Of a stretch of DNA of 64,000 bases, positions 1 through 44,412 are shown in pieces. Position 1 is the stretch's first letter; the number at the start of each line of letters is the position of its first letter. The DNA lies in the sequence record MH383160.1. One strand, 5' to 3'. Under the pieces are notes generated by a model that saw only the letters and a list, made by a program, of their open reading frames with translations, was not told the origin of the DNA and made no database searches. A program made the translations under genes and the position numbers.

Positions 1-619
1 ATATAGTACTAAAACATTTGAGTACTGTCAATTAGATAATATTATATTTCTTAAAATAAAATGCGTCCTGTGTTGGTTGATACTCAATGCCATTGCCGTT
101 ATTGACTTCAACTAATAAACCTTTGTCAATAAGTTTTTTAATAGTACGATACCCTTGTTGAAAATTGGTAAAATGTGAATCATTACGAAAGGTATAACCG
201 TGCTTAACTGCTTCATCAATAGTTTTCTTTTCGATTTTAGATAATTTCATTTTGTTTCTCCCGTGTTGGTATAGATATATAATACTAAAACATTTGAGTA
301 CTGTCAACGTGATATTAGTTTTATTTTCTTATTATACTGTTGATGCTCATAAAGGTTTATCTTTCCAGTATTCTCAATTACTATTCTGTTGTTGGTGTCC
401 ACGTCGATTACACGTAGTTTCCCGTTGCTTAACTTCCTAGGCAATAGGTTACCATTAATAAACTCATTAGCAAGCTGTACGGCCTTTGTGATGATTCTCT
501 GAGGTGCTTTATAGTGTACCCGTAAGATGTTATCTTTATATAGTTGAACCTTAATCATTTTGTTTGTCCTATAAAAAAGGCGGGAACTGATCCCGCCGTG
601 TTGTTAGTACTGCAAGTTA

Positions 620-1024
620 TTAGATAACCTGGCGGCGTTTACTGTATACTGTTACACGATTACCCTTACGATCATGTCGGATCTCTTTCTGGTTGCGAAT
701 CAGTTCACTTGGACGCTTAAGGTTTGCCAGGTGATCCGCGTGAGTCCATGCGGTGTGGTTTACCTGTACTTTGATATCAGAATCAGCGATAAACTCATCT
801 TGTGCATCAAGTATTGACGCCAGTAAATCCGCTCGTTTTAGTTCTGCTGCTGTTAGTACTGGCTCCGGTGAATTCACAATATCAGAGATCTCTTTGAACT
901 GTACGGCCCAGCGTTGACCTTTCGGTGCATCTTTGCCCATGTCTTTAAATGTTTCGCCTTCCTCGCGTGCAACAATACGGGCAGCTTCACGGGTAGCGTA
1001 AAATTTAGTAATCATGGTATACAT
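620..1024 (-). CDS. Early hypothetical protein, paralogue of 12330-12596
   Basis: Shares FxATRExARIxARxxGxTFKDMG...G.RWAV and (I/K)HDRKGNRVTVYS blocks with 12330-12596. Confidence 0.8.
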   Translation of the reverse strand: MYTMITKFYATREAARIVAREEGETFKDMGKDAPKGQRWAVQFKEISDIVNSPEPVLTAAELKRADLLASILDAQDEFIADSDIKVQVNHTAWTHADHLANLKRPSELIRNQKEIRHDRKGNRVTVYSKRRQVI

Positions 1025-2086
1025 CCTATTAGTTAAGTTAGTACTACAAGTTAGAGTCTATTATAAAGTACTATCTGGGCAATGTCAAATAGTACTTTAA
1101 ATGGATTCTATTACATGTCTTTCTTACGTTTTACATCGTGGTAGCGAACTGTTATTTCTTTGTTGATCTCTTCCTCGATGCGGTGAATAACTTTTTCTTT
1201 CGGGTTGAAACCTATAACGGTTTCTTTAATGATCTCCAAGCCCGTGTATTCGCCTTGTGTACCGTAACCGTATGTAAAGGTTTCGTGTCCCAGGTCTTCC
1301 CAGCGGTCGCCAATTAACGCAGACACGTAGCAAGAGTGGTAAGTATTGCCGTGTGAATCAGTCCACCGATTAACATTAATGTCAAAGGAGGTTACAATTT
1401 TCAGTTCCACTTTCTGGGCAAGGATCATAGCCATTTTTATTTCTCTCTCTTTGTTAGGAGGGGAACCGTTTCCCCTCACTTGATGTAAACTATTATACAG
1501 TACTAAGATACTTTGTCAATACTTATTTTTTGGAAAGTTTACGCATTAATTCTACGCTTTCTTGTGAACGTTTTGCTACCTGGCAAGCTGTATGGGTAGT
1601 AAACATTTTTGTATAGTCTGACGCTTTGCCACCGAACCGAGCGGCACGTTCACGGGCACTTGGAACTAATACTATTTCTTTCTTGCAGATAGTGCACTTA
1701 GCCATTTTTATTTCTCTCTTTTAGTTAGGAGGGGAACCATTCCCCTCGCTTGATGTAAACTATTATACAGTACTAAGATACTTTGTCAATACTTAATTAT
1801 TGTAAATGTCGTGAATAGTGATAAAGTTTTTACGACCGTAAACCTGCAAATCAGTATCAATAAAGTGCTTATCTAGTACATCCTCGACGCTTAACGCGGT
1901 GTCGTGGATATCTTCGTAGAATTGAGGATCTACAATCTTGCTTAAGTCATCCGGCGTTAACTTATCATTTAACCATTGAACCGCCTGGATATCTGCTTCA
2001 CGTTTCCAGTCTTCCAGGTTAGTAGTCAGTACTTGCTCGATTTCGTTAGCTGTCAGTAGAATCCGCATTTTTATGTTTCCTTATCA

Positions 2087-2260
2087 GTGGTTGATGTAAG
2101 TATTATACTCTTTTACTTTCTATTGTCAAACTATTTTATCAGGGGAGGTTTTCTTATGTCTTACTCCTGGACTACTTAACGGGGTTACTTGTTTCGTTCC
2201 CCGTCCTGATGTAAAACATTATACTTGATTCTAAGTACAATGCAAGTACTTTTTAAAAAT
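2087..2260 (-). repeat. ~175-bp dispersed repeat (copy 1): two tandem promoters flanking an ORF-less hairpin pair
   Basis: Aligns by eye with 12046-12225 (shared ttgtcaaactattttatcaggggag, ttactcctgg, ctacttaacgggg, ccccgtcctgatgtaaaacattatac). Confidence 0.85.
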
Positions 2261-3723
2261 AGTTTTCAGTACTAGCCACCAGCATATAATAGATACATTT
2301 ATGCACCCGGTGGGCTGAATTGTTTCTATGCGTATATAATAGCAAAGGGACTGACCGGAGTCAATCCCTTTTTCAAATATTTTTAAACTTCTTTCGGGTT
2401 GCGATATGTGATAGCGTTCGGGTACATTTGTTTAATGTTATTCCATGCCTGGTTAACATTGTAACCACTTGAGCGAATCAGTTGGTTACTACCGACACCT
2501 TGAAACACTACTTCGAATAAGAATTCTTTCATGCTTTCACCTCGCGATCTGCTTTACCTTTACGCCAGGACATTACTAATTGTTCGCGTTGCCATAAGTC
2601 GAGTGATACAAAAAGTTTTGCGGTATCACTTTTAGGATACTCTCCAGTAGTACCTAACCGATAAAACAGATCTTTCAGTACTGATAATTCTACTTGAATC
2701 ATTTTATTACTCCTGATTGCGTTAATACTTCTACAATTGCATGAATGATCATAAGTACAGCTAAAACAATAATCATCGGATTCATTTGCATAAGCTGTAC
2801 TCCTTCTATTAATCTTTCAGCCAATGATCTTGAATGAATTTTTCACAGAATCCCTGTTTCATGGATTCTAACAGGCGTTCGCGGTGAGCGGCGGCATATT
2901 GCTCAGTACTATGCGTTACGCCAGGCTGATAACGTGATACCCCATCCGGTCCGATGTATTGTACATCCCACGGTTTTTCGTTAGTATCAGACCATTTACG
3001 AACGATTAGTTGACCTTGCATTTTTCTTTCCTCTCAGTGGGGAGAATCATTTCTCCCCTTCATGTAAACTATTATACAGTACTGGGTTGCATTGTCAATA
3101 GTTTTTATTCACCTTGTTTGAATTTAGTTTTCTGCATTGATTCCATGATTGCAACCAATACGCCGTGGATCTCGCTTAACGCGGAATCACTAAAAGCATT
3201 AATGAATAGTCGATCATTCTCGCGAATATTTTTAATGTACTTTTCAGCAGTAGTTGCGAATTCATTCAACGGTAGATCAAATGCTTTATCCCATGATGGA
3301 TGGCGTAATTGTAACAGTACTGGATTATCACGATCACCAGGGGAAAACGTACCAGTGATGAAACATACGCCCGGAATACTTTCGAACTGGCAACGGACTT
3401 CCTTTGTGATAGTAGTATGAATGTACATTTATTGTTATCCTCTATTAAATTAATATTACAGTTTATGAATCAATTCTTTATCTAAGCGATAGCGTACATT
3501 ATTAATAGTAACGGCATTGTTTTTAATGCTACGCTGTACAGGTCCACCAGCAATAACAAATGTTGCTTTATTGCCCCGAACAATGATAGCACTTCCAGGA
3601 TTACCGAAATCATCTTGTACTAAAATACTTGATAAGTTTTCCATTTTTTATTTCCTCTTAGTAGGGGAAGATGTTTCCCCTTGATGCAAGTACTATAACA
3701 GTACTGAAAACTAAATGCAAGTA

Positions 3724-4080
3724 CTATGATAAAATCATGATAGGATATTCACTATCGATCAGTACCTCGAATCCGAAACCTTCGTACCATTCTTTAAGAT
3801 TAAAGGCGTTATCTTCTCCCGTATCGCATTCTAAAATGATACAATCTGAATCATCGGCGGCATCAATAAAGGCATTCATTAATTCGTTACCTTCACCATT
3901 GCCCCGACTATCAGGATCAACATAAAGAGAATCAATAAACGCTACACGGTCATAATCAAGATCCGGTGCAATGATTCCACGTTTAACAAACCAGTACTGC
4001 AATTGTGCTACTTTGCCCTGTACTTGATAGCCAGTGATCTCGCCATTGTCAGTAGTACGCGTGATATGTTGTATTCCCAT
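3724..4080 (-). CDS. GNAT-family acetyltransferase
   Basis: Acetyl-CoA motif A (FIDSLYVDPDSRGNGEGNELM) and motif B (NLKEWYEGFGF). Confidence 0.85.
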   Translation of the reverse strand: MGIQHITRTTDNGEITGYQVQGKVAQLQYWFVKRGIIAPDLDYDRVAFIDSLYVDPDSRGNGEGNELMNAFIDAADDSDCIILECDTGEDNAFNLKEWYEGFGFEVLIDSEYPIMILS

Positions 4081-4143
4081 GATTTCAATCCTCAGTTAAG
4101 ATATAAAATATTATAAACTATCTTTCAGTACTGTCAATACTTT

Positions 4144-4401
4144 TTATCTCATAGATCTATGCCAACAATTACGCGGATCTCTTTTAAAAGTACTATCATG
4201 ATCCTCCTGGCAAGTAATACAATACATGCACCCTATAACGGCCTGGCGTCGATTCTCAGGAATTTTATCGCCGCAGTCGAGGCAATGTACCAGTGATTCT
4301 CTTTGTGCGTTAATTTGCTTTCTAGCGTGGTTAACGGCGGCCTGAATCACTGCGTTAATCTCGTCTTGTTCGGCCCCATCTTTCGCGAATCCTACAGCCA
4401 T
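4144..4401 (-). CDS. TraR/DksA-family C4 zinc-finger protein (YbiI-like)
   Basis: N-terminal helix with acidic D..EQDE residues followed by CLDCGDKIPENRRQAVIGCMYCITCQE. Confidence 0.9.
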   Translation of the reverse strand: MAVGFAKDGAEQDEINAVIQAAVNHARKQINAQRESLVHCLDCGDKIPENRRQAVIGCMYCITCQEDHDSTFKRDPRNCWHRSMR

Positions 4402-4732
4402 TATTTTAACCTCATTATAAAAATACTATAGTACTGTAATGCGACAATAATATTACTTGTTCTTACTTTTTCCAATCCACATGATACCACATATTCATCC
4501 CCATATGTGCGGAACGATACACCATGAAAATTTTTATACACTTGCACTACTAATCATAACCTTTCGTCTAACCAACTGCATAGAATTATACTACTTTACG
4601 CAAATTGATCAAGTATTGATCAGATCATTTTTTGATCAATATTATACAGTTACATTTGTGCACCCTATGGGTTAGTGACGTTCTCGTCTTGATGTAAGTA
4701 TTATGCCAGTACTGGATGATATTGTCAATAGT

Positions 4733-7700
4733 TTATTTTAATTTTTTTCTGTCATTGATTAATGCTTTCAGTACTATACTAATGATTTGCAATGATTCAT
4801 CAATGACTATAAAATTATTTTCTTTCATTAGATGATAGTTACCATTGATTGTATATTCTAAGGAGTACTGTTTACGTTTAATTTTTGATAATGTTTCTAT
4901 TTGTTTTTGTACTGATTTCATGCTAATCATTGTTAAACGTCCTGTAACGCATTCTAACGAGATAAACGGTTGAGTACTGGCATTGTATAGGGTAATGAAT
5001 TAAAGCCCACCAGCGTTAACCAGTGGGCTATAATCTTACATCTTGCGGATAATCTTAACAGTATCTTTCACCGATTTACCGTCTTGCTGACATTGCTCGA
5101 TCATTGCGTATTGTTCTGCGGTCAGATCCTCGCCAGTTTTTGCCAGTACTGCGTCGATGAATGAATCCAGTGCGATCATTTTGTTTCTCTCTTAGGTTAA
5201 GTTAACTACTGTTGATAAAACTTATTATACAGTACTATCAAACTATGTCAATAACTTTAATAGTACTGGTAATATATTTTAGCGGTAGTCGTCGTATGCT
5301 TTATTCACCTGGCGAATGTAACTTTCAAAGGCTTCGTCTACCGTTTCATACTCCCGAACATAATCACCATAGGAAACTACATACATACCTTTTTGATCTT
5401 CAAACGTCATGATGATAGAATCCAGACCAACGATTTCAGTTTTTGCGATGATAGCCATTTTTTAATTCCTTAGTAGTGTAGTTGATAAAACTTATTATGC
5501 CAGTACTATCAAACTATGTCAATAGCACTGTGATAATATTTTTAGTTAATAATAGTCAGTGTAAAATTGTAATCCCCTGCCTGGTATAGTACTTTATCGC
5601 CGAACGTGCCGACACGTTTCATATTGCAATAGATACCCATAACACTTTTTACATCTTTGATATTCCGAACGCCTGTAATATCTTTATTAAAATAATCGTG
5701 GTCAGAAAATAAAACTTGTTTTGCATTTTTCAGTACAGTGCGGATATTAGCCATTTTGTTTTCTCTCTGTTAGTGGGGAGAACTATTCTCCCCTTGATGT
5801 AAACTATTATACAGTACTATAATCTATTGTCAAACTATTTTTTTATATTATTCGAAATCTTCTGGACCGGACTGATAATCATCTTCACCGTATGCACTTT
5901 CTAACCGCTCACCAGTGTAATCATCAGTTAAGCTATCATCCTCATAGTTCACGTCTACGCCTGTGATGTAAAACTGGCTATCGTCTGGATCATTGAAATT
6001 AATTTTTTGGATGTTTACAATAACTGTATTGATGCCCAGGACACCGCCATCAGCCGTTACAAAGTACTGATAGTTTTCACAACCGCCTGAATTGAAACCG
6101 TAATTAATTTCGGCCCGACCATCATTTAAACGCAGTGCCTGGGCAATGATTTCATTTTCAAAGTTAGATTGAGCAATTGAGATAGTCATGATTCGTTTCC
6201 TTATTACCAGGGGAAACCGTTTCCCCTTGCGATGTAAAACATTATACGCTTATTGAGATAGTTTGCAAGTACTTTTTAAAAATAGTTTTCAGTACTCAAA
6301 CATTATACAATAGATACACTCCTGCACCCTGTGGGCTAGTGAGCTATCTCTCAATGAATATATAATAGCAAACTGGCTGACCGAAGTCAACCACTTTTTC
6401 ATTTATTTTTAGCTTTTAGAATCGCCGCCTTTCGCGTCATGCCTTGCTTGATGTACTCATTTACTTTCGCTTTTTTAGCGTTTACCTTGTCTGCTTTCGT
6501 TTTAGGAGTACTGTAAATTATACCGTTAGGATTCATTTAAATCACCATAAAGAATAGATAGGTTACTAACAATGCCGCGATCATTGCACCGACCAGGGCC
6601 GAACTGTAATAAGCTAATGATTTCATTTTTTAGCCTGAAAATAATGTTTAATTTGAGCGGCGGTCAGTGCACAATTACGCAGGAAGTTTTCTGTATAACT
6701 GCGTCGAGTACTGAAAGAAAATTGACCTTTACCGTTCCCGATAGTAACATCAAACCGAGCATTATATTGTTTCATTTTGTTTCTCCTGTTCTTGGGGAGA
6801 ATCATTTCTCCCCTTCATGTAAACTATTATACAGTACTAAAAACTAATTGCAAGTATTATTTTTTAGATTTACGTAAACTTTCTACCATCTCAGGAGTAA
6901 GCCCCAGCGGGTAGGAAACCACTTCATCCACAAAACGCAAAGGGAATACCCCATCTAAAGTTGAACGTGCTTTCTTATTAGTACTCTTTTTTGATGCTTT
7001 CATTTCATATTCCTTAATTAGTGGGGAGAACTATTTCTCCACTTCATGTAAACTATTATACAGTACTAAAAACTAATTGCAAGTATTATTTTCTAAAAAA
7101 TGTTTGTATGCTGAATCAACCACTCTTTCGATAACATACGCTAACGGCACGTATCCAACTACATGACTACAATAAAAAGGACTACGATTAGAATCATCGT
7201 ATGCAAATACTTTTTCAGGATCTGCATCAATCACATACATATTAACCTTTAAGATGTCGATCTTATCCTGTACAGTAAGCATATTAATTAACCTTTTAAG
7301 TACTGGCTTAAGTAGTCTTTTTGATCTTCGGTGATTGCAGTCATCTTCCCTAGTACTGGGTTGATGATATAATCCCCTGTAACGTCCTGTGACGCATTCT
7401 CAGGGTGTTTAACGGCTGGGGTAGCCATAGCCATTGCCTGGACTTGTTCGACGCTGTAACGCTCATAAAGGCGGCATTCTTCCGGTGTTAACATAGCATC
7501 AGTACGCTTCATCGGTTTAATGATGCTTTCGATCTCATTCAGTACTTGATTAACGTTCATGGTATAATCCCCAATATAAGCGGCCTAAAACGACCGCTAA
7601 CGATGTTTTGATTAATAGGTGTAAGGTTGACGCTCAAACAATGATTGCACGTTGTACGCCCCGCTAATGGGCTTTGCTGGCAAATCGATTTTATATTGTT

Positions 7701-8417
7701 CACGCTTAAAGATAATAAAACGGCAATTGTTTTTAACATCAAAATTGATTGAACGTTCCAGGAGTTTTCCATCGTGCACAAATACAAGATAACCGCTTGG
7801 TACTTGTTTTGTAGTACTGGTTGCAACCATAGACCGACGAACATGAGTACCTGCATCGATTAAAGTACTGATATTTTTCATTTTAGTTTCCTTAGTTGTC
7901 TTGATAAAATCTATTATGCCAGTACTATCAAACTATGTCAATAGTACTGTGATAATATTTTTACTTACTTTTTGCTTTCTTAATTGCTTCCACCTGGTCG
8001 GCCCATTCTTTACCCCATACTTGTAAATTATAATGGTACTGGCAAAGAGCAACGCCCCGCTTTAAACCAGTAATAGATTTTTTACCACATTGACAAGTTT
8101 TCATATTAGTTTCCTTGTAGTGGGGAGAATCATTTCTCCCCTTGATGTAATGTATTATACTTTATTCGATTTACTTTGCAAGTACTTTTTTAATTTAATT
8201 CATCCAGGCAAAGGATACGCTCAACGCCCAAATCAGTTAAACTAATGGTCGGCACTTGATAGGTTTCAATGTATGCTACAGTTGCCCACTGACCGAACTC
8301 ATTAACGGCCCAGGTATTCATTGCATTTTGCAATTCCGCACCTGCCTTGTTAGTAATGACTGCAACTACTTGTTCGTTGCCAGTAGTACCAGATACGCGA
8401 GTAATGATAATAGCCAT
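4733..8417 (-). other. Cluster of small early hypothetical CDSs: 4733-4930, 5036-5179 (47 aa, not in ORF track), 5542-5754, 7073-7282, 7288-7560, 7612-7881, 8190-8417
   Basis: ORFs with RBS, most behind a cassette promoter; 5036-5179 translated by hand (MIALDSFIDAVLAKTGEDL...). Confidence 0.7.
5848..6189 (-). CDS. Acidic early protein
   Basis: 113 aa with a strongly D/E-rich C-terminal half (DVNYEDDSLTDDYTGERLESAYGEDD...EDFE); own promoter and RBS. Confidence 0.75.
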   Translation of the reverse strand: MTISIAQSNFENEIIAQALRLNDGRAEINYGFNSGGCENYQYFVTADGGVLGINTVIVNIQKINFNDPDDSQFYITGVDVNYEDDSLTDDYTGERLESAYGEDDYQSGPEDFE

Positions 8418-8654
8418 TGTTTTGATTCCTTTGATTTGGAAGGAGAACCGTTTTCCCCTCTCGATGTAAAACATTATACGCTAATCTATTAATCATGCAA
8501 GTACTTTTTATTACTTTTTGCAAAATACTTTAAACGCTCTCAATCGCATTCTAACGACCTTAACGCCACCAGCTAGGGCGATGTATCAGATAATCAGTTT
8601 AATGCGTTAGAATCGATTATAGGCGGTGCTAGTGGACTGGAATACTATAGACAC

Positions 8655-8692
8655 AAAAAAGCCCACTGTTTAAGGTGGGCTATTGATTCAGT
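8655..8692 (-). terminator. Intrinsic terminator, near-identical copy at 9391-9420
   Basis: AAAAAAGCCCAC-tgtttaag-GTGGGCT hairpin with U-tract on the minus strand, downstream of 8703-9185 and 9435-9734. Confidence 0.8.
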
Positions 8693-8702
8693 ACTTTAAT
8701 TG

Positions 8703-9185
8703 TTATGCTTCAACTTTGCGATGAGCTTCGATCCATTCCTCGCGAGTCATACCGCTTTCTTTGATAGCGTCCAGTACTACCGCAATGCAGTTACCGCGTA
8801 CAGGAATCAAATGTTCTTCACCGTTATCAAGTACTACAGTAACACGTTCTTGAATCCATTTTTTAGGTTTAGATTCTGGCTTATCTTCACCATACTTAAC
8901 CGCCAGGGCTTTATGTGCCATTTCTACAACTACTTCCAGATCCAATCCAGACACTGCCGCCTGGATACTGTCAATTGTTGCTTGCAGTTCGGCTTCACGG
9001 GCTTTTTTCTGTTCTTCCAGTTCTGCTACCTTTTTGGCTTGTAATTCTTTCGCTTCACTGTACGCAATGTTAAAATTGTTGCGTACTGCTTTCATGGTAT
9101 CGTTATCCAGGTCAGCCAGCAATTCAGCAGCAATAACAGTATCGTTTGAAATCAGTGCTTTCAGGAATGATTTTACATTAGCCAT
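8703..9185 (-). CDS. H-NS/StpA-like nucleoid protein with a divergent DNA-binding loop
   Basis: N-terminal coiled coil (ELQAKKVAELEEQKKAREAELQ), basic linker, and a C-terminal domain VLDNGEEHLIPVRGNCIAVVLDAIKESGMTREEW that aligns by eye with the H-NS C-terminal domain. Confidence 0.6.
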   Translation of the reverse strand: MANVKSFLKALISNDTVIAAELLADLDNDTMKAVRNNFNIAYSEAKELQAKKVAELEEQKKAREAELQATIDSIQAAVSGLDLEVVVEMAHKALAVKYGEDKPESKPKKWIQERVTVVLDNGEEHLIPVRGNCIAVVLDAIKESGMTREEWIEAHRKVEA

Positions 9186-9434
9186 TTTATAAATCCTCAA
9201 TTAAAGTTTAGTTTACGTTTATTAGTGTATCAAAGTTTTTTTGACGTGTCCAGTTTTTCGTTCGACTTACTGGCGGTCTACTTAGTGCTCCCCGTCTTGA
9301 TGTAATACATTCTACGCCTTTTTGCGGTATTGTCAACTACTTTTTTAAAACTATTTTCAAAGTATCTCAGTACTACAATACTACAAAAATAAAAAAGCCC
9401 ACTGTTTAAGGTGGGCTAGTGATTCAGTACTATA

Positions 9435-9734
9435 TTATAAACAGTTAATTACTCCGGTGTGCGTTACTTTCTCAGTATCCATAACCGTGACCGATCCACG
9501 CTTAGTACTTGCATCATAATAAATTGTTGTGCTACCGTTTTCGTCTTCTTCATGGAACGGGCCGTTTTTAAATGCTTCTGGTTGGATCTCTAAATCCTTT
9601 AAAACAATCTCGCCCGTACTTTCATTGGTCATCGCAACAGTGCACTGAATGAATTTTTCACTACTCACATCTAACGACGCATTAACAGCGAAAGAGGAAA
9701 CAGATAAAGCCAGGGCGATGATTGCAATTTTCAT
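9435..9734 (-). CDS. Exported protein with signal peptide and a terminal Cys pair
   Basis: MKIAIIALALSVSSFAVNA signal peptide; Cys near the mature N-terminus and at the C-terminus. Confidence 0.75.
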   Translation of the reverse strand: MKIAIIALALSVSSFAVNASLDVSSEKFIQCTVAMTNESTGEIVLKDLEIQPEAFKNGPFHEEDENGSTTIYYDASTKRGSVTVMDTEKVTHTGVINCL

Positions 9735-12045
9735 TTGATTATCCTTAGTTACTAGGGGGAACCTCTCCCCCGTGCTATGTAAAATATTATACAGTACTAA
9801 AAACTAATTGCAAGTACTTTATGATTTTTTATAAAACATTTCGGCAGTGATATTTTTACCCGTTGGTTGTACTTTATCCAGAATTTTTTGATGCCCAGGC
9901 CGTCCAAATGAATATGATCCGTAAACCGTAAACCAGTAGTTACCCTCAGTGTTTACATGTACAGCACAATAGGGAACGCCCCGCGATTCATCACTAGTAA
10001 AGTGTGCTACCGTTCCCGTTACATTCGAAGTCGTTGATTTGATTTGTTCAAGCATTTTCTTATTCCTTAGTTACCAGGGGAACCGCTCCCCCTATGCAAA
10101 ACATTATACGCGTTTAAAAACTAATAGCAAGTATTTTAATAAAAAGTATTTGAAAAATAATTGTTGACAACTGCATCCAGTACTGGCATAATACTTATAT
10201 AAAGACGATACAGTCACTAACCCACAGGGTGCCGAGATCCGTCTATTAAATGATTCAGTACTGAAAAAGTAACGGGGAGTTATTATCTCCCCGCGTTGTT
10301 ATTTGGTAAGGTATAAACAGAAGTCACCTTTATTTGCTACGCCGCCAGTGTAACGCGATGAATAGTTAGAAATATCTTGTACTTCTGCTATTACCAGTGT
10401 ATCATCATTCATTTCGTCGCAGAAGCAAACGGCTGGATCTTTAACGCCGATATTGTCGGCATGTTCCCGCATAGATTTAACCAGTGCTTCCAGTTGAGAA
10501 AGAGTAGTGATATTAGCCATTGTATTTTCCTCATTACCAGGGAGAACCATTTCTCCCCTCTATGTAAAACATTATACAGTACTAAAAACTAATTGCAAGT
10601 ACTTTTTAATTAAATTCCATAAAATCATTCTCAACGTGCACAACAATCTGATTATTTTTAAAGTCCGCAGAAAACTCAATACAATCATATACTGCTTTTT
10701 CTGTTACCATACTATGAGTACCAATCGGATTAATAGGGGATTGAATTGTTTCAATCTCGTTACCTTGTTCATTAACAATTAAAATATTAAACATAACTTT
10801 TACTCCTGATAGTGTTTACCTGATATAAAGTATTATACGCCTTTATTGCTTAGTGTCCAGTACTTTTTAAAACATAATCAAAGACACTTCTCACATCATT
10901 GATCATCGCCTGGCGGTTAGCAGGTAAAGCATCAGGATCACCACTATCCCAAGCCTGTATGAAGCCTCCAAGCTCTGAATAAACTTTATTACGCAATCCG
11001 ATTAACTGTAATTCTTTTTCTTCAAGCTCTTTGATACGTTCAATTAAATCACTCATTAGATAATCCTTAGTACTTAACTGTAAGATCCGCAACGGTCGCA
11101 GTAGTGCCCGTCTTCCTCGTCATCGTCAACGAATTGCCCGACGAAATGATCTACTTTCGCTTTCAGGTTATTATAATCGTTTTCTACTTCCTTTAATCGT
11201 TCCTGGTAGTATTCCAGTGCCTCAAGATACGCCGCCTCAGCAGTTTTTGCACGCATAGCTAAATTCATGCCACGCGATTCATCATAAAGCCAATAACCAT
11301 CAGTGCACTGGCTAATAGATAATGACTTGCTTAATACTGTATAGCTAATTACTTTGCTCATTAGATATTCCTCAGTAAAGGCGGGAACCATTCCCCGCCA
11401 TTATCTCAGTACTAAATTAATATGCGATTGATTCTACTACGCCATCAATAACATTGAATTGATACTCGTTACCCTCGATCAGTGCCGTGATGTTCTCAGT
11501 AGTGAATTGATCCTCATATGCATTCTCTAAATCACGGTACAACTTGCGGGATAATTCACGAATAGTTTCAGTGAGTAGTTCCTCAAGCTCATTAACTAAC
11601 GTTTCTTGTTTTGCGGTTAAATCAGTGTAAGCCGATTCAATGTACCCGCTTACAGTATTCTCATGCGAGTAGTGGGAGTGAGAACGCTTTACACTCATCG
11701 GCAAATCATCTTCATTCAGCAGGTGACGGATTGAGCGATACTTAGTTAATGCTCTTACCTTGCGTAAAAACTTCACTGCGTCAACGTGGTCAGTACTGAT
11801 TGATGCACCGTCACCTTGCGACCAAAAACCACTGAATCGTAAATCTGCGTCATTAATGCCATATTCCGGTAGTACTGTTTCTTTATAGTATTCAATTTCA
11901 CTTTCAGAAAAATAATCATCGTTTAAGTTTTTTTCACGTTCCCGAACCAGTTCGATAGCTGACGTTTGTTGTTCTGCGTTCAATTCAGAAAAAGCCATAA
12001 CATAAGTAGTAGTAGTGATAGTTTTCATTTTGTAACCCTCATTCA

Positions 12046-12225
12046 GTAGTTGATGTAAGTATTATACGCTTTTAAAAACAATTGTCAAACTATTTTATCA
12101 GGGGAGTTTTTCGTGTGCCTTACTCCTGGGCTACTTAACGGGGAGTTACTTATTTCGTCCCCCGTCCTGATGTAAAACATTATACGCCTTTAAACATAGT
12201 TTGCAAGTACTTTTTGAAAAATAGT
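12046..12225 (-). repeat. ~175-bp dispersed repeat (copy 2)
   Basis: See 2087-2260. Confidence 0.85.
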
Positions 12226-12329
12226 TTTTAATCACTTTTATATAGATACACTCCCGCACCCTATGGGCTATCGCCTTGTGTCCGGCTTGTAAGTATTATC
12301 TCACTAAGCCGGATAATGGTCAAGTACTT

Positions 12330-12596
12330 TTATTCAAGTACTGCTATCTTTTTAGTACTGTACACAGTAACACGGTTGCCCTTGCGGTCGTGCTTTATTT
12401 CTACCACTCGACGCGATACACTATCAGGACTTTTTAACGCCGATAACCAGTACTGTAAGGATCTGGCTGTACTTTGCTTTACTACCGCCCAACGTTTACC
12501 ACGTTCCGATTGCACGCCCATATCTTTAAACGTTGCCCCGTCCTGGCGAGCGGCGATCCGAGCTTGTTCACGCGTTGCAAAGTATATAATATTCAT
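12330..12596 (-). CDS. Early hypothetical protein, paralogue of 620-1024
   Basis: Start trimmed to MNIIYFATREQ; shared motifs with 620-1024. Confidence 0.75.
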   Translation of the reverse strand: MNIIYFATREQARIAARQDGATFKDMGVQSERGKRWAVVKQSTARSLQYWLSALKSPDSVSRRVVEIKHDRKGNRVTVYSTKKIAVLE

Positions 12597-14165
12597 GCTG
12601 TTATCCCATCGTTGATGTATGAATAAAATCCTATTATAAAGTACTATCACCGTGCAATAGTACTTTAAATAAATTCTATTACATTCCAACCATTGCAGCA
12701 CGGATCGCCGTAGTGCTATATTTGAATCCGTCCGGCGTTTTATCTTGTCCAGTCTGTTCTAAAAATAGCATCATATGACGGGCCGCATCATTGCGATTAG
12801 TGTTAGCGGCAATAAAGTCCTGGGCCAACCGGTATAATGATTCATCGTTATTAATCCAAAGGCTTACATTCCATTGAGTTTTGTTAGCGTGACCTAAGAA
12901 CATTTTTGATTTAGCCATTTTTAAATCCTCGTTTGATTTGAGGCGGGAATAGTTCCCGCTCTCGATGTAAAGTATTATACGCTATTTGTTAGTACTGTCA
13001 AACTACTTTTTAAAACTTATTCGTAAATCTTGCCACTGTCAGCCCATACCAGGAAACGAGGCATATTATCCCATGCATCTTGTTTTAAATTTAAACCGTG
13101 TAATACTTCTGTACTTTCCATTCCTGGTACTGGTTTACTATACACCGCGAACAATTCACCCATATACTGATAAGCCATCGTTAAATCACTTGCGATCATC
13201 TTATGGATCATCGCATCAAGCATCACGGTAGCGGCGTATTGTTCACGCTTAAGCGGTAACATTGCAATAAGTTCCCGATAAGCTGAAATGTGAATTTTTA
13301 CCGTTTCTGCCGGAAGATCTTTCATCTCGTCGCGGAAGTTAACCAGGTTAGCAATAATTTTATTGATTTGAGTAGCCATCGTTTTAATCTCTCTTAAAGT
13401 GTAGCGGGAAGTGTTCCCGCTCTCGATGTAAAACATTCTACACCTTTCCCAATACTTTGCAAGTACTTTCTACAAATACTTTTAAAATAGTTTTCTTTCT
13501 ATATAGGAGTACTATCATTCAGTACTGCTACACTAGAATCAATCAACCAAATCACTACTATACCCCATAAAACGGCCTCAGACGCATTCTAACGCATTAA
13601 TACACCTAAGCTATACATTTGCACCGCCACCAGCTAACCAGGGCTTTACGATGCGTTTAAACGCGTTAAATTATTTTCAATTATTTTGTTTTTTGCTATT
13701 GACTCAGTACTAAAAAAGCGTATAATTACTACATAGACGCGAGAAAGCGGATATCCCAAGGGGTGCGGAATTGTGCCCAAAATTCAAGATATAAAAAAAA
13801 GGATACACTCCCGCACCCTAGCAGGTCAAAGCACTTTCTCAGTACTGAATCATAGTACCATAGTACGCCCCAGGATGGCAAGCAAATTAATTAAAACTTT
13901 TTTCATCCAGGGTATTGCTTTATTTTTCCAGTACTGTATAATAGTTTCATCAAGTCGAGAAAGACTATAGCCCACCGGGTGCATAGTTACGCCCAAAATT
14001 TCAGTACTAGATTATTTTTTAAAAATATTCATCCAGGCGGTTGACATTGCCCCCAGTTTATTAGATAATGATTCCAGATTCAGAAAAATCTAACTCCAGA
14101 TACTGCGGGGAAACTATCCCCACGCGGTAGGGGAACTATTGGAAAAAAACAAAATAAAATTTTGA

Positions 14166-14295
14166 TTTAGCCGTCTATACTTCCAGACGTGTAACCATCT
14201 AGCCGTTTAGCCGTCCAAACGTCTAGCCATACAGCCATCCAGAAATCTAGCCGTTTAGCCGTCTAGATAGATAGCCATCTTTACTTCCAGACTTC
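14166..14295. repeat. Iteron-like array: 8 x AGCC(G/A)T, a 19-bp direct repeat and an 11-bp direct repeat
   Basis: AGCCRT at 14169, 14201, 14209, 14225, 14233, 14249, 14257, 14273; ATCTAGCCGTTTAGCCGTC at 14197 and 14245; TACTTCCAGAC at 14178 and 14282. Confidence 0.9.
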
Positions 14296-14389
14296 TGGAG
14301 GGCTAGACATATCTACGTCCAAAATCCATCCAGGGTAACTACGCCCAAAATCCGTCAGTACTATACCATAGATCTATCTTTTGAAAGGG

Positions 14390-14463
14390 AGTATTCAGTA
14401 CTGCCACAATAGCCCTCACTGTTACTGTAGGAGGATGAAGACTATCATGTAGTACTGAATACT
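14390..14463. repeat. Perfect 13-bp inverted repeat
   Basis: AGTATTCAGTACT (14390-14402) and AGTACTGAATACT (14451-14463). Confidence 0.85.
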
Positions 14464-15345
14464 GTTAGAGGGAACCCACCAGCTTGTGCTGGTGGCATAA
14501 TGCTTTAGATTAAAATCAGTACTAATACCATTCTGTTAATATCAGTACTGTTATTACGATTTTCATATGAGGTTCAAAAAGATGTACCACCACAGGAGGA
14601 ACTATCTTTTCTGTACTGTCTCACGACAGGAGGTAGAGTAAATGAATTGTTCGCAGCAACTCATCTCTCTATGTAGAACATTATACAGTACTGAATCATA
14701 ATGTCAATAGCTTTCTTTCATTATTCAGTACTGATATTCTTGAGAACTACCCGACTACAAACATCATTATATCCCACAAATCATAAACGTCCCAACGTAA
14801 ATTTCAACTTTCGAAGATCCAACTTTTATTTCATAGGTACTCCAAAATTTTTAGGATCGAGATTTAGGATGGAGTACTAACCAACTTTTTGCTGGAGCCT
14901 CAAGGGGTAATGGAATTTTACCCCGAAGGGTAAAGGGGTAATTGAAATTAAGGTGAAAGTAATAATTCAGTACTAATCATTGCGTGATTACTTTTGATTA
15001 CATTTGATGTAATTTGAAAAATGGAAAAGGAGCTTGGAAACTACAAAGTACGGCAGACTTCCTCTGCCTACTTAGTGGCATATTAGTACTGAATCATTCA
15101 CACACATTTCCGTGCATTCTTGAGCAATCTTGTCTATACTAATCAGTACTGAATCATATATAATCATTCTGTGATTCTACGGTGCTCATATAAATGTTTA
15201 TATATGATTACTTATGACTACCTATGATTACGGGGTTTAGCCTGGGGAGAATCCTAGTGATCGCATTTGTCCAGGCTGAATTTTAACAATTCGCCTGTAC
15301 ATAAAGGTTGTTCACTAGGAGCTTCCCCTGTCTACTTGTGTTTAA

Positions 15346-17468
15346 TTACTTCCTATATATAAGCATTAAGATATAGTAGTACTGATTGTACTGTACATTC
15401 TCTTTAATATTATAAGGGTCTATAGCAATCTCGGTACATCTGTTAAATGCATATCTATTAAATGCCAGTGGAATTATAGATCTAATCCATACTTGTTCAT
15501 TTTCTTTTAGTTTACTTATATAGAAGTTTTTATACTCTTTATGCATAGTATTATGTCTATTAATATGATAGTACTAGTGTTAGTACTGAGCACAATTTTT
15601 CTTTATAGTTCTTAGGGTATATAGAATCTTTTATGCACTCATTGAAGTGCCATAGGTATAATCTTGGGTCGCATTCTTTATATATTCTTACGGGGACGAA
15701 TGTTAGTTTTCTTATATAGAATTCTTTATGTTCTTTATTCATATTAGTACCTGAATATAAGTAGGATTATGTTATAGTACTGGTTAGTACTGCAATGATT
15801 CTCTATACATCGATTAACAGTTATGGAATAGCTATATCTGGCGTAAGCATTATCCAGCGGGATTTTACATTGAGCACTTAGAGAAAGTACAGTAGGTAGT
15901 GTATTCAAATAGAAGTCTTTGTAATTATTCATACAGGAATAGTATACCTATGATGCCGGAGTACAGGTTAGTACTGTTACCATCTTCATTTGCGTTTAAA
16001 GTCATTTGAATACAATTATTGTAGCATACTCTGCCGAAATATGTATTAGTACTTAAAGGTGGTGTAGTCCTTAGAAACATTTGTTCTGAGGGGCTTATGT
16101 ATTTGGAGTAGAATTCTTTATGTTCTTTATTCATATTAGTTAGTGTCTGTATATAAGTAATAGTAAGAATACGTACTGCACATCTTCATCTTTAGTATTG
16201 AGTACTGTACGTATTGCGTCATGGAACAAGAATATAGTACTTGGGTCATGAAAATTTAAAGGGGTTCTGGGTACGGCACATTTGTAGTTCCCTTTAACAA
16301 ATTGTGTGTAGTATTCTCTATGCATATTAGTACCTATATATTAGGGCGAGAATGTAGTACAATTCATATGGAATGTAATTTGGGGTGATCGCACACTGTG
16401 TATGGTAAATGAATTGTTCGGTATTTTTCTTATCCTTGATATCTATTGGGATTTGTGGTATAAGCATTTGGGAGTTTAGATCGAGATGGCTTAAGTAGAA
16501 TTCTTTATGCATATTGTTCTCTTAGAATACGAAAGCTAGGTACAGGGTATGATACAGTACTCGATGATAGCTGTCAAAATCTAGTATACATGCTTTAGTA
16601 CACATAGTAAAATACACTTTATCATTTTGTGCATTGATACCGCGAGGTTTATCTAATAGATTAGTTCTGAGGTACATTGGGAAATATTTTGTGTAGTATT
16701 CTTTATGCATGTTAGTACCTGAATATAAGTAGGATAGTGTTATATAGCTGGTCATAACTACTACTATTTTCTATACTTCGTTCTATGCAGTTATTGAATC
16801 CAAGTACTGCCAAATCGTTATCCAGAGGGACTTTATATCTGGCGTAGTGTTCAAAAATGCTGGGGAGAAATTGTTTGTAGTATTCTTTGTGCATATTGTT
16901 CTCTTTAGTACTTGAATATTAGGGCGAGGATGTAATACAGTTTATATGTTCTATCCTCGTACATTAGGGTGTACTTAGTACATTCTTGGAACATTGTTTT
17001 TGCGTCATCTTTTATGCCCAATGTAACGTTTGGTATAAGGCTTTGTAGATACATTGGGAGTTTCTCTATGTAGTATTCTTTATAGTTGTTCATATTATGT
17101 GTTATTTCGTGAAAACAAGGGTTAGTACTGCATAGTACAAGTCATACGTATCTTTAGGGTTAATAGCACCTTTAATACATTCTTTCATTAATTCATTATA
17201 GATAATTTTAGTACTGAAGGTATTGGATGTTACTATATCGGAATTAAGGTACGACAAGTAGAATTCTTTATGTTTGTGCATATTAGTACTTATATATTAG
17301 TAAAAGGATGTGATACAGTACTCGATTATAGTCTTCAATATATATCGAGGATTTAGTGCACTGAATGAAGTAGTCTTTTTCGTAGTTTTTTTCTATACCC
17401 AATGGTTCTGTTGGTAGAAGGTGTTGGAGATACATTGGGAGTTTCTCTATGTAGTATTCTTTATGCAT
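15346..17468 (-). other. Tandem array A1: 11 paralogous ~59-69 aa CDSs (15346-15546, 15560-15742, 15744-15932, 15925-16134, 16140-16325, 16327-16512, 16522-16710, 16712-16894, 16905-17093, 17102-17281, 17283-17468)
   Basis: Shared N-terminal M(H/N)xx(K)E(F/Y)Y and C-terminal Yx(I/V)LxL(I/V)(F/Y)xY; tight TAA-T-ATG coupling. 17102-17281 translated by hand. Confidence 0.85.
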
Positions 17469-42297: not shown

Positions 42298-44412
42298 GGT
42301 TTAACCCATTTATTCAACAATTCACCCAACTTCACAATCTCATACCCATCCAGATAGCCATAGGAACACTCAGGTGTTTCATAAGTTGAACCATCATGGA
42401 TACCTTGACATTGGCTTTTGGAACGTTCAAGCAATCGTTGCAGTACTGATACGTCATCAAGAACGTAATACAAGTTAGCATATGGGTCCGTCACAATACA
42501 GTACTTAAACATGCCAAATGTATCAATCGATTTTTCAACCTTAGCAAATTGTTTCTTTTCTTTATTATACAATGCGTACATATTAATCTCCATAATCAAG
42601 TTTAACTAACTTACCATCCAGATACCCAAAGTTTTCTGGCTTCGCATCTGAATAGAAGAAGTCAGTACTTAACTCTGAATTCAATGCTAAAGCACACAAC
42701 TCCACCCAAAATAAACCCCTATGTTGCACTGGCTTACAACGTTTCTGTACAGTTACTAGTCCAGTACATGATGACCACAATGTAGGACAGATACTACTAT
42801 CACTACGATTAGAGTACTGCATCCACGAACGTTCATTGAGGTTAGCTATCATTCCCGTTAAGAATAACTTCCAGCTTTTGAAGGTTGGAATCTTGATAGC
42901 GTATTCCCCAATGAGGATAACAGTTCGGGTTGCACCTTTCAAATCTATATTCATAATATTAGTACGAATCAGATTCCCAGTACTCGATTGCTTCTTTCAG
43001 CAATTCTTTAGCACGTTGTTTTGCAATGCGAGCGGGTAACAGATATGTGTACATTAACTGACGCTTCACTTCATTCAGTGAAAGCTGTTCATGGTACAGT
43101 GCATCCATCAGTCGATTACGAGTACGTAGTTTCATATAAGTTATCCTTATTTCAAAGAATCATAGTAAGCAGTGTCAAAGATTGGAGTCATAATAACATA
43201 GTCAATACGGTCAATGTAAGTTGAACTCCACATTTCTGGTTTGTCATATAACTGACGCTCGCGTTCATTCATACGAGTCAGTACTTCTTCCAATTTACTA
43301 CGTGAATCCATCAATGTATTACTCGAACCATAAGTGAAGTACTCAGTCCAATGATATTCATATTCAGTACTGATAGATTGAATAGTACCATCTTTGAAAT
43401 GAGCTAAGGCATAACCTTTCTCTACAAAGTTATCAGGTGGAAGAACACCATCTGGATTAGTTTTCAATGCTTGTGCTAACTTTTCTTTAATTTCAGTTAA
43501 CGTGCATACTGAACGAATGTTCTTCAGGTTTGATACTTGAAAATCACTGTACTTTCCAAAGAAAAAGACACGCCAATCTTTAGGTTCATTATCAGATACG
43601 GTAGCATCAGGGTGATGGGCGAGTAAACGAAGAAGGCCAGCTTTGTGACCGTTAATGTAGATTTCATGGATGTGGTTAGCAGTTTTCTTAAAAGTAATCA
43701 TGGTAGATCCTCGATTGTAGGGATGAGAAGTTCATCCCCTTGATAAGCATTATACAGTACTGAATGTGTTTGTCAACTCAAAATAAATTCATTTCATGTG
43801 CGTATTGTGGTTCAAGATAAGATAAGTTTTTGAAACTGTCTTTCAATTCTGCATCATCTACGTACACAGTACCAGGTACATTCCCCATAGTGAAGCCAAC
43901 CCAAACAGTCATGTTTCCAGTTCCTAAGCGGGGCATTGATAGCGTCCCGTCAGGTGAAACATCAAACGCTACACTAAAGTCATCCGTTACAACTTCCGAA
44001 CCATTTTCCAGAATAATACAACCACGTTCTTTAAGCTTCTGAATGTGGATAGCAGCCTCTACAGCACGTTTAAAGTTATAATAAGACTCTTTATCCTCGA
44101 ACATTGATTGTTTAACCAGACGCTTGTTTAGCTCGGTTACTTTGTGCATTTGACGCATTACTTCAACTCCCACAGTTGTAGAATTTCATAAGAGCCTGGT
44201 GGTGCTGGATTGATAATCTCAGGGTATTCAGTACTGTTAGGATTACCACCAGCATTGAACTCAGCAAGTAATAATTCGAGTTCATTCCTATCATGAACAA
44301 CAAACACGCAATATCCAGTTCCTTCTTCAAGAACTGTAGTTGATCCCGCACAATCCCATACGGTATCAATACATAATAATTCTTTAGTGTTTTTATTACG
44401 CAACGCAAACAT
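42294..44412 (-). other. Hypothetical CDSs 42294-42599, 43147-43701, 43778-44173, 44158-44412 (42294 and 44158 have similar N-termini)
   Basis: ORF track; an early cassette with GGGATGA..TCATCCC hairpin and TTGACA promoter lies at 43720-43775. Confidence 0.65.
42583..42954 (-). CDS. Minimal protein-kinase-like protein
   Basis: VILIGEYAIKIP (beta3 Lys), SDAKPENFG (catalytic loop), LVKLDYG (DFG-like). Confidence 0.6.
   Translation of the reverse strand: MNIDLKGATRTVILIGEYAIKIPTFKSWKLFLTGMIANLNERSWMQYSNRSDSSICPTLWSSCTGLVTVQKRCKPVQHRGLFWVELCALALNSELSTDFFYSDAKPENFGYLDGKLVKLDYGD

What the first reader, a model, noticed from the sequence alone, without database searches (positions are those of the whole stretch)
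1434..13470. Early genes are built as standard cassettes with a conserved 5' leader (ACAUCAAG + GGGGAGAA/UUCUCCCC hairpin)
Seen: about 20 promoters in 12 kb, nearly one per gene, with a conserved start sequence and a G/C-clamped hairpin between +1 and the RBS. Stem sequences co-vary (GGGGAGAA/TTCTCCCC, GGGGAA/TTCCCC, GCGGGAA/TTCCCGC, and GGGATGA/TCATCCC at 43.7 kb), which suggests selection on structure. Established: 5' stem-loops stabilise E. coli mRNA against 5'-end-dependent RNase E decay. Inference: a phage-wide 'self' leader that protects or prioritises early mRNA during host shut-off; the repeats may also let early genes be gained or lost by recombination.
Basis: partly seen in the sequence, partly recalled or inferred. 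Interest (0 to 1): 0.65.

Follow-up and report, generated by a model that had tools for sequence, protein, structure and literature searches.

The report
Early-gene cassettes with leader hairpin
A jumbo E. coli phage expresses many of its first-entering small genes from repeated host-type promoter units that often carry a short G/C-clamped RNA hairpin just after the predicted transcript start. These units are a variant of cassettes known from T4-type phages, and they are swapped between genes and between phage lineages.

Summary
The window is 100% identical to Escherichia phage UB (Asteriusvirus, PBECO4 species), and window 1-15,072 lies in the block that is a ~21-kb direct terminal repeat in its relative fEgEco12.

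On the minus strand of 1434-13470 there are 26 near-consensus sigma-70 promoters for about 35 genes. Fifteen of them, plus one at 43.7 kb, are followed by a 6-9 bp hairpin with a G-rich 5' arm. The hairpin starts 1-6 nt after the predicted +1 and ends 14-23 nt before the AUG. The RBS stays unstructured.

All 20 copies in the 353-kb genome sit in one 17-kb block. RaK2, Munch, rV5-like and phAPEC8-like phages share the layout with different stem sequences. Mismatches in the stems are G.U rather than A.C, so a sense-strand RNA structure is selected. None of the hairpins has a T-run. True terminator-in-promoter elements co-exist elsewhere in the window.

Orthologous genes carry different hairpins, or none, in different phages. 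Gene gains, losses and replacements break inside the cassettes.

Best reading: a PeSL-like mobile early-expression cassette whose stem-loop has moved into the 5' UTR, probably as an mRNA stabiliser. The stabiliser role is inferred, because no TSS or half-life data exist. "Phage-wide self tag" is not supported. I class it as a new variant of a known kind.

The parts
1432..1519 (-). Cassette: -35 at 1519, TATAAT, leader hairpin 1456-1480 (GAGGGGAA/TTCCCCTC), SD, ATG at 1434
1703..1789 (-). Cassette with hairpin 1727-1750 (GAGGGGAA/TTCCCCTC, 3-nt loop), ATG 1705
3019..3098 (-). Cassette with hairpin 3039-3058 (GGGGAGAA/TTCTCCCC), ATG 3021; drives 4 overlapping small ORFs
3642..3720 (-). Cassette (weaker -10, TATAGT) with hairpin 3663-3681 (GGGGAA/TTCCCC), ATG 3644
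5752..5833 (-). Cassette with hairpin 5775-5793, ATG 5754
6187..6268 (-). Cassette with hairpin 6206-6230 (GGGGAAA/TTTCCCC), ATG 6189
6773..6853 (-). Cassette with hairpin 6794-6813, ATG 6775
7001..7082 (-). Cassette with imperfect hairpin 7020-7043 (GGAGAA/TTCTCC core), ATG 7003
8102..8181 (-). Cassette with hairpin 8122-8141, ATG 8104. Cassette and gene are also present in Vequintavirinae phage A7_1.
8415..8500 (-). Cassette with hairpin 8441-8459 containing a G.U pair, ATG 8417
9732..9813 (-). Cassette with hairpin 9751-9775 (GGGGGA/TCCCCC), ATG 9734
10053..10130 (-). Cassette with hairpin 10075-10094, ATG 10055
10518..10598 (-). Cassette with hairpin 10535-10562 (GGGAGAA/TTCTCCC), ATG 10520
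12916..13001 (-). Cassette with hairpin 12940-12963 (GCGGGAA/TTCCCGC), ATG 12918. The orthologous gene carries two other stems in SP27 and fEgEco12.
13377..13462 (-). Cassette with hairpin 13403-13421 (GCGGGAA/TTCCCGC), ATG 13379
43699..43776 (-). The only copy outside the block: hairpin 43719-43739 (GGGATGA/TCATCCC), ATG 43701
11375..11406 (-). Same kind of hairpin (11380-11400) with no -35 element, about 20 nt after a stop codon and before the next SD. It shows the hairpin is not tied to a 5' end in every case.
579..597 (-). Related GGCGGGA/TCCCGCC hairpin followed by T6, so terminator-like, between two genes
2066..2129 (-). Example of a hairpin-less cassette (same promoter, ACATCAAC start, unstructured leader). 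Others are at 4078-4137, 5177-5251, 5456-5522, 7879-7941, 10792-10859 and 12026-12088. The orthologue of this gene has a hairpin leader in phAPEC6.
2336..2371 (-). Type-B composite. A terminator hairpin encloses the -35 hexamer TTGACT, followed by a T-run and a -10 (classic PeSL / promoter-coupled terminator layout). Others have their -35 at 6390, 38434, 40605, 41887 and 53270.

Best explanation
The region is an array of modular early-gene expression cassettes in the terminal-repeat block of an Asteriusvirus jumbo phage.

Each cassette has these parts in order:
- an AT-rich upstream stretch;
- a near-consensus sigma-70 promoter;
- a conserved start, TTTACAT(C)RR;
- an optional 6-9 bp hairpin with a G-rich 5' arm and a C/U-rich 3' arm;
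- an unstructured A-rich Shine-Dalgarno region and the AUG.

What is shown:
- The hairpin is a structure selected in the sense RNA.
- It sits a few nucleotides from the predicted 5' end and leaves the RBS open.
- It lacks a terminator T-run.
- It is a facultative, exchangeable module.
- The cassettes are the breakpoints of gene gain, loss and replacement, and they are shared with unrelated large coliphages.

What is inferred:
- The hairpin acts as an mRNA stabiliser. On the cassette's own transcript it would hinder 5'-end-dependent entry of RppH and RNase E.
- Few terminators separate the cassettes. On read-through transcripts the hairpin would therefore also stop 3' exonucleases after a cut in the AU-rich leader, and so protect the upstream cistron.
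- The repeated ~80-nt units serve as homology for PeSL-type modular shuffling.
For: - Promoter and hairpin anatomy.
- All 16 leaders fold into a single 5'-proximal hairpin. The SD and AUG are unpaired in most. Hairpin-less leaders have dG of about 0.
- Enrichment is 111 of 446 leaders against about 12 in shuffles and 22 of 445 in a gene-internal control.
- At least 12 different stem sequences occupy the same place in UB, phAPEC6, RaK2, Munch, A7_1, nepoznato and IMG/VR contigs.
- Model-fitted alignment: 76 cells changed on both sides against 29.5 in shuffles (0 of 500 reach it); covariation score 0.35 against 0.24.
- Non-Watson-Crick stem positions are G.T 8 against A.C 1 in unique hairpins, and GU 79 cells against UG 1. 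This points to the sense RNA, not to duplex DNA.
- None of the 15 leader hairpins is terminator-like. The phage does use T-run hairpins where it terminates.
- All 20 genome copies lie in a 17-kb block. This block falls inside the stretch that aligns to positions 1-20,461 of fEgEco12, whose direct terminal repeat is 20,993 bp (PMC13070987).
- Shuffling: breakpoints against SP27 and fEgEco12 fall in leaders and promoters. Orthologous genes carry different hairpins or none. Genes are shared in a different order with Vequintavirinae and Phapecoctavirus phages.
- The PeSL precedent is in PMC2839356 and PMC4122927.
Against: - No transcription start site, RNA end or half-life was measured. The only public runs are assembled contigs.
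- The predicted unpaired 5' tail is 1-6 nt, mostly 3-5. By my own knowledge of Emory and Belasco's work, this is borderline for classical 5'-hairpin protection.
- One family member (11380-11400) has no convincing promoter, so a 5'-terminal position is not obligatory.
- The 5' arm is always purine-rich (mean 0.86, never pyrimidine-rich). Pure structural selection does not predict this. It could reflect common descent or a sequence-specific partner.
- z-scores of single leaders are modest, from -0.2 to -4.0.
- Breakpoints in intergenic DNA are also what purifying selection alone would leave behind.
Confidence: 0.55

Rival explanations
1. Attenuator or terminator, as in classical PeSLs. The hairpin would stop or pause polymerases that read through from upstream cassettes, so that transcription does not pile up along the array.
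For: - In RB49/phi1 PeSLs a Gn-loop-Cn stem-loop terminates as well as rrnB T1.
- The related hairpins at 579-597 and 10272-10294 do carry T-runs.
- 11380-11400 follows a stop codon without a clear promoter.
Against: - All 15 leader hairpins lie downstream of the -10, so they would also act on their own transcripts.
- None has a T-run.
- The phage has a separate, canonical terminator-in-promoter element where termination is wanted.
Confidence: 0.1
2. The hairpin is a recognition tag for a protein. The protein could be phage- or host-encoded, an RNA-binding factor or a nuclease. It would time the shut-off of early messages or give them priority.
For: - The strand asymmetry is invariant: the 5' arm is G-rich and the base is clamped by GGG...CCC in all lineages.
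- Flanks are conserved on both sides of the stem.
- The element is confined to the earliest block.
Against: - Loops, stem length and stem interior vary freely.
- The same gene works with or without the element.
- No candidate partner was identified. The neighbouring proteins are ORFans apart from a GNAT and a DksA/TraR zinc finger.
Confidence: 0.12
3. Insulator or expression booster. The clamp would keep the A-rich RBS free of upstream pairing in any transcript context. Alternatively the nascent hairpin would prevent backtracking and so speed clearance of very strong promoters.
For: - The RBS is predicted to be open in most leaders.
- The distance from hairpin to AUG is tight, 14-23 nt.
- In the window the hairpin goes with TTGCAA/16-nt-spacer promoters: 7 with the hairpin against 1 without. 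TTGACA promoters show 5 with against 11 without.
Against: - Hairpin-less leaders are just as unstructured, so no insulation need is visible.
- The promoter-type linkage may only reflect descent of whole modules.
Confidence: 0.12
4. DNA palindrome that serves as an operator for a dimeric repressor shutting off early promoters.
For: - The inverted repeat is centred near +16, where a bound protein would block polymerase.
- Palindromes can double as factor sites.
Against: - Within one genome the half-sites differ in sequence, and the distance between the GGG and CCC ends varies with stem length (6-9 bp) and loop length (3-6 nt).
- Mismatches are G.T, not A.C. This is a single-strand, sense-RNA signature.
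Confidence: 0.05
5. No present function. The hairpin would be a relic of an ancestral PeSL terminator carried along as the cassette duplicated and spread.
For: - The element is facultative.
- Cassettes are clearly copied as units.
Against: - Hairpin potential is kept in lineages whose stem sequences have diverged completely (RaK2, nepoznato).
- Compensatory changes and G.U-only mismatches are seen.
Confidence: 0.06

Closest known systems
PeSL (promoter-early stem-loop) cassettes of T4-type phages RB49/phi1, T4/PST and KVP40/nt-1 (Arbiol 2010, PMC2839356; Comeau 2014, PMC4122927)
   Same: - Near-consensus sigma-70 early promoter with an AT-rich upstream region.
- An adjacent Gn-loop-Cn stem-loop.
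- An SD and start codon at the 3' end.
- About 80-100 nt units repeated before small ORFans in a hyperplastic region.
- Indels and replacements between close relatives that break in the units.
   Different: In published PeSLs the stem-loop lies upstream of the promoter, or between or over the -35 and -10, and acts as a terminator. Here it lies after the -10, in the transcribed leader, and has no T-run. The hosts are Rak2-like jumbo, rV5-like and phAPEC8-like phages rather than Tevenvirinae. Mini-circles were not tested.
5'-terminal stem-loop mRNA stabilisers (ompA, papA; T7 phi10 leader). My own knowledge, plus the review PMC3997798.
   Same: A short stable hairpin close to the 5' end of a message whose sequence is free to vary. 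It precedes an open RBS in an organism whose decay starts with RppH and RNase E sensing the 5' end.
   Different: The position relative to a mapped 5' end is unknown. The predicted 3-5 nt tail is at or beyond the tolerated length. No half-life data exist. The element is repeated about 20 times as part of a mobile cassette.
Intercistronic REP-type 3' stabiliser hairpins (malE-malF). My own knowledge.
   Same: A GC-rich hairpin without a T-run between cistrons of read-through transcripts could block PNPase and RNase II.
   Different: It lies downstream of an internal promoter rather than directly after the stop codon, and it is much shorter than REP.
Promoter-coupled terminators (bioRxiv 10.64898/2026.08.19.745784)
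   Same: The type-B elements of this window (terminator hairpin enclosing the -35, T-run as spacer, then the -10) match this idea and the RB49 PeSL layout.
   Different: This applies to the six type-B sites, not to the leader hairpins that are the subject of the finding.
Lambda boxB/nut leader hairpins. My own knowledge.
   Same: A small hairpin early in early transcripts.
   Different: There is no conserved loop and no boxA-like partner. About 20 copies occur, each at its own promoter, and there is no need for long-range antitermination.

Membership tests
PeSL cassette | Near-consensus sigma-70 early promoter with an AT-rich upstream region | tested here: met
   26 promoters in 1434-13470; 11 are 12/12 matches in 1-15 kb
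PeSL cassette | Adjacent stable stem-loop, often Gn-loop-Cn | tested here: met
   15 of 26 promoters plus 43776; dG -7 to -15 kcal/mol
PeSL cassette | Stem-loop upstream of or inside the promoter, acting as terminator for upstream transcription | tested here: not met
   The leader hairpins start 9-14 nt after the -10 and none has a T-run. The feature is met only by the separate type-B sites.
PeSL cassette | Clustered in hyperplastic regions before small ORFans | tested here: met
   All 20 genome copies lie in 17 kb. The genes are nearly all hypothetical.
PeSL cassette | Indels and replacements between close relatives that break in the cassettes | tested here: met
   Junctions against SP27 and fEgEco12 fall in leaders and promoters. 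Orthologous genes carry different leaders.
PeSL cassette | Excised mini-circles formed by recombination between cassettes | not testable with these tools
   Contig 'skips' that end at cassettes may be assembly effects at repeats.
5'-terminal stem-loop stabiliser | Hairpin within a few (about 2-4) unpaired nt of the true 5' end | tested here: inconclusive
   The predicted tail is 1-6 nt if +1 is the A eight nt after the -10. No TSS data exist.
5'-terminal stem-loop stabiliser | Structure matters, not sequence | tested here: met
   At least 12 stem variants, compensatory changes and G.U-only mismatches. However, the 5' arm is always purine-rich.
5'-terminal stem-loop stabiliser | Lengthens mRNA half-life in an RNase E/RppH-dependent way | not testable with these tools
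   Needs rifampicin-chase experiments.
Intrinsic terminator | GC-rich stem followed directly by a U-tract | tested here: not met
   None of the 15 leader hairpins is listed on the minus strand.

The most novel reading that the evidence does not exclude
The G-clamped hairpin with its conserved short 5' tail is a recognition mark read by a phage-encoded or host factor. That factor would act only on messages of the first-entering terminal-repeat block, for instance for timed destruction, translation priority or 5'-end modification. If so, three unrelated lineages of large coliphages share a portable 'immediate-early mRNA' tag.
Probability: 0.12. Interest if true: 0.8.

Novelty: new variant of a known kind. 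Interest (0 to 1): 0.5.

Why it matters
If the hairpin acts as proposed, large coliphages carry a compact, portable unit of promoter, stabilising leader and RBS that can be attached to any small gene. That would explain how the fast-evolving host-takeover gene sets of jumbo, rV5-like and phAPEC8-like phages are expressed at once and exchanged between lineages.

It extends the PeSL idea beyond T4-type phages, with a different placement of the stem-loop.

Natural paired variants exist, with the same gene carried with and without the hairpin. These make the function directly testable.

The units are also ready-made strong expression parts for E. coli.

Tried and rejected
- Whole genome of the window: not held. 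I used the identical record MH383160 through a locus handle instead.
- Rfam at gathering threshold: no family in the 64 kb. tRNA scan: none.
- RNA evidence. All runs that hold the stretch are kept as assembled contigs, mostly wastewater metatranscriptomes. Laying four of them gave no starts or ends, only contig pieces and joints at cassette repeats. I treat these as weak evidence because repeats of 31 nt or more can mislead assemblers.
- Literature. I found no description of a leader hairpin in papers on phAPEC6, CBB, fEgEco12, Sharanji or rV5. The library is not exhaustive.
- Model R1 is too sequence-specific. It did not find the RaK2 variants, which the promoter-anchored fold scan did find.
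- Alternative pairing of the 3' arm with the SD, as a switch. This is convincing only in the 6853 cassette and was dropped.
- A uORF starting at the AUG in AUGA loops. This occurs in only 4-5 cassettes and the frames are inconsistent. Dropped.
- A sigma-70-dependent pause element in the start region. The match to a -10 hexamer is only 3 of 6. Dropped.
- Pfam scan of the ten largest proteins. It gives a GNAT, a DksA/TraR zinc finger and DUFs, with no RNA-binding or nuclease candidate.


Full report
**Identity and setting.** Window 1-15,400 is 100% identical to Escherichia phage UB (MH383160.1, 353 kb, Asteriusvirus, PBECO4 species). All genes in 1-14.7 kb are on the minus strand. In the related phage fEgEco12 the homologous stretch is positions 1-20,461 of a linear genome. 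Window position ~15,072 aligns to its position 1. That genome has a 20,993-bp direct terminal repeat confirmed by restriction digests (PMC13070987). The finding therefore lies in the terminal-repeat block of small, mostly ORFan genes. The few recognisable products are a GNAT acetyltransferase, a DksA/TraR zinc finger and DUF7247. This is the picture of an immediate-early host-takeover region.

**Check of the observation.** Two independent scans find 26 strong sigma-70 promoters on the minus strand in 1434-13470. They have TTGACA or TTGCAA, a 16-17 nt spacer and TATAAT. Three weaker promoters are embedded in terminator hairpins.
- There are about 35 genes there, so roughly two promoters per three genes. 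Some promoters drive 2-4 overlapping ORFs. Three drive non-coding units.
- Exact ACATCAAG occurs 11 times against 2.8 expected. The true consensus after the -10 is RNTTTACAT(C/G/A)RR.
- Fifteen promoters, plus one at 43,776, are followed by a hairpin with a G-rich 5' arm and a C/U-rich 3' arm: 6-9 bp, loops of 3-5 nt, dG -7 to -15 kcal/mol.
- If +1 is the A eight nt after the -10, the hairpin starts 1-6 nt after +1. This placement follows the standard rule for sigma-70 start-site choice and is my inference.
- The hairpin ends 14-23 nt before the AUG.
- Folded from predicted +1 to codon 4, all 16 leaders give this one hairpin. The SD and AUG are unpaired in most.
- Nine further promoters carry the same leader without the hairpin, and those leaders are completely unstructured.
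- The hairpin thus looks like an insert in an otherwise standard leader.

**More than chance, and localised.** Among 446 unique leaders picked only by promoter consensus, in this window and related loci, 111 have such a hairpin. Shuffled leaders give about 12. A control segment inside the genes gives 22 of 445. A covariance model of the 18 window copies finds nothing else in the 64 kb. In the whole 353-kb UB record all 20 distinct hits lie in one 17-kb stretch, all on the gene strand. The 'phage-wide' claim therefore fails.

**RNA or DNA?** The same layout (TATAAT, 9-14 nt, hairpin, 5-12 nt, SD) occurs in several other phages:
- phAPEC6, SP27 and fEgEco12;
- Klebsiella phage RaK2 and Salmonella phage Munch;
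- the rV5-like phage A7_1 and the Phapecoctavirus nepoznato;
- several IMG/VR contigs.

At least a dozen unrelated stem sequences are used. Examples are GGGATACA/TGTATCCC, GGGAATGAA/TTCATTCCC, GGGGCAA/TTGCCCC, AGGAGGT/ACCTCCT and GGCGGCA/TGCCGCC.

On the model-fitted alignment, 76 cells are changed on both sides against 29.5 in shuffles (0 of 500 reach it). The slid registers score lower. Non-Watson-Crick positions are G.T 8 against A.C 1 in unique stems, and GU 79 cells against UG 1. Transitions would give both kinds equally in duplex DNA or in the antisense strand. The bias therefore indicates selection on the sense RNA.

Variable stem and loop lengths also speak against a rigid dimeric operator.

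One feature is not explained by structure alone. The 5' arm is always purine-rich (mean 0.86), and no flipped version occurs.

**Not a terminator.** None of the 15 leader hairpins has a T-run. The phage does terminate with T-run hairpins elsewhere. These include six composite elements in which the hairpin encloses the -35 hexamer TTGACT, has a UUCG-type loop, and is followed by a T-run and the -10. That is the published PeSL and promoter-coupled-terminator layout. Only about seven terminator-like sites occur on the gene strand in 15 kb. Read-through across cassettes is therefore expected, and in such transcripts the hairpins are internal.

**Modularity and exchange.** Against SP27 and fEgEco12, gene insertions, deletions and replacements break inside the cassettes.
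- At 7941 the same promoter and leader drives a different gene.
- At 10859 homology ends right at the start site and resumes at the upstream element of the next promoter, so leader plus ORF were replaced as one unit.
- The gene at 12918 has three different stems in three phages.
- The gene at 2068 has no hairpin in UB, SP27 and fEgEco12 but has one in phAPEC6 and a 121Q-like contig.
- The gene at 1024 has a hairpin in RaK2 but none in phAPEC6 and a 121Q-like contig; the UB promoter at 1088 upstream of it is also hairpin-less.
- Six UB early genes recur at 70-85% nucleotide identity, in a different order, in the Vequintavirinae phage A7_1. Three recur in nepoznato.
- One case includes the whole promoter-hairpin-gene unit (window 8102-8181).
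- Contigs from wastewater RNA libraries show further joints that end at cassettes. Assembly at repeats makes this evidence weak.

**Mechanism.** Shown: a selected sense-RNA hairpin near the predicted 5' end, an open RBS, no terminator features, and facultative, portable behaviour.

Inferred: mRNA stabilisation. RNase E cuts much faster when it can bind an accessible 5'-monophosphate than when the 5' end is base-paired (PMC3997798). The B. subtilis pyrophosphohydrolase needs at least two unpaired 5' nucleotides (PMC3997798). From my own knowledge, the ompA-type hairpin protects only within a few nt of the end. The predicted tails of mostly 3-5 nt make full protection uncertain.

A second, compatible role is as a 3' exonuclease barrier for the upstream cistron on read-through transcripts. 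The promoter-less copy at 11380-11400 fits that role better.

The rivals are scored in the report sections: attenuator, protein tag, insulator or escape aid, DNA operator, and relic. No TSS or half-life data exist, so the choice among RNA-level functions stays open.

**Comparison and novelty.** The closest known system is the PeSL cassette of T4-type phages (PMC2839356, PMC4122927). It shares the promoter, the Gn-loop-Cn stem, the SD, the ORFan context and the shuffling. The defining placement and terminator role of the stem-loop are not met here. I therefore call it a new variant of a known kind, not a member. I found no description of it in the papers on related phages that the library holds.

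**Verdict.** Interest is moderate (0.5). The element is widespread, undescribed and easy to test, but it is a variation on known themes.

Noticed in passing
whole window: The palindrome AGTACT occurs 260 times in 64 kb. An order-2 Markov model expects about 44, and the next most common palindromic hexamer occurs 76 times. It is found in genes and between them, and often as CAGTACTG just before the -10. The cause is unknown; a recognition site for some phage function is one possibility.
   Followed up: partly
window -35 positions 2364, 6390, 38434, 40605, 41887, 53270 (minus strand): Composite terminator-promoters. A hairpin (AAAGGG-TTGACT-TCGG-TCAGCCC, dG -10 to -19.5 kcal/mol) encloses the -35, and is followed by a T-run and TATAAT. 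This is the classic PeSL / promoter-coupled-terminator layout, and it is spread over the window, unlike the leader hairpins.
   Followed up: yes
window 2118-2245 (-) and 12077-12206 (-): Two roughly 85%-alike promoter-driven units of about 95-110 nt without an ORF, each ending at the next promoter. They fold with a closing helix AUCAGG/CCUGAU (dG -19 and -22 kcal/mol). A third copy lies just upstream of the window in UB. They are candidate small RNAs with no Rfam match.
   Followed up: partly
window 2314, 4671, 6335, 12267 (-); 10221, 13971 (+): The conserved motif CCCAYNGGGTGC occurs six times, each about 25 nt after a promoter, on either strand. The same motif follows promoters in Klebsiella phage RaK2 (L007). 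Its function is unknown.
   Followed up: partly
window 14168-14266: An array of about 12 copies of an 8-nt unit (TAGCCGTC-like) in a 1.2-kb non-coding stretch. It lies about 0.8 kb from the position that aligns with the left physical end (terminal-repeat start) of fEgEco12. It may be terminus-related.
   Followed up: partly
window 5440-6167, 7965-8506, 9828-10067, 11069-11417, 12677-13015 against L001 and L002: Early genes are shared at 70-85% nucleotide identity, in a different order, with the rV5-like phage A7_1 and the Phapecoctavirus nepoznato. Unrelated large coliphages thus draw on a common pool of early genes.
   Followed up: partly
window 1-14800, minus-strand promoters: Hairpin leaders go with TTGCAA -35 boxes and 16-nt spacers: 7 with the hairpin, 1 without. 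TTGACA promoters mostly lack the hairpin: 5 with, 11 without. This suggests two module lineages inherited as whole units.
   Followed up: partly
window 3724-4080 and 4144-4401 (-): A GNAT acetyltransferase and a DksA/TraR C4 zinc-finger protein lie among the early ORFans. Relatives also annotate a protein kinase in the same block. These are plausible host-takeover functions.
   Followed up: partly
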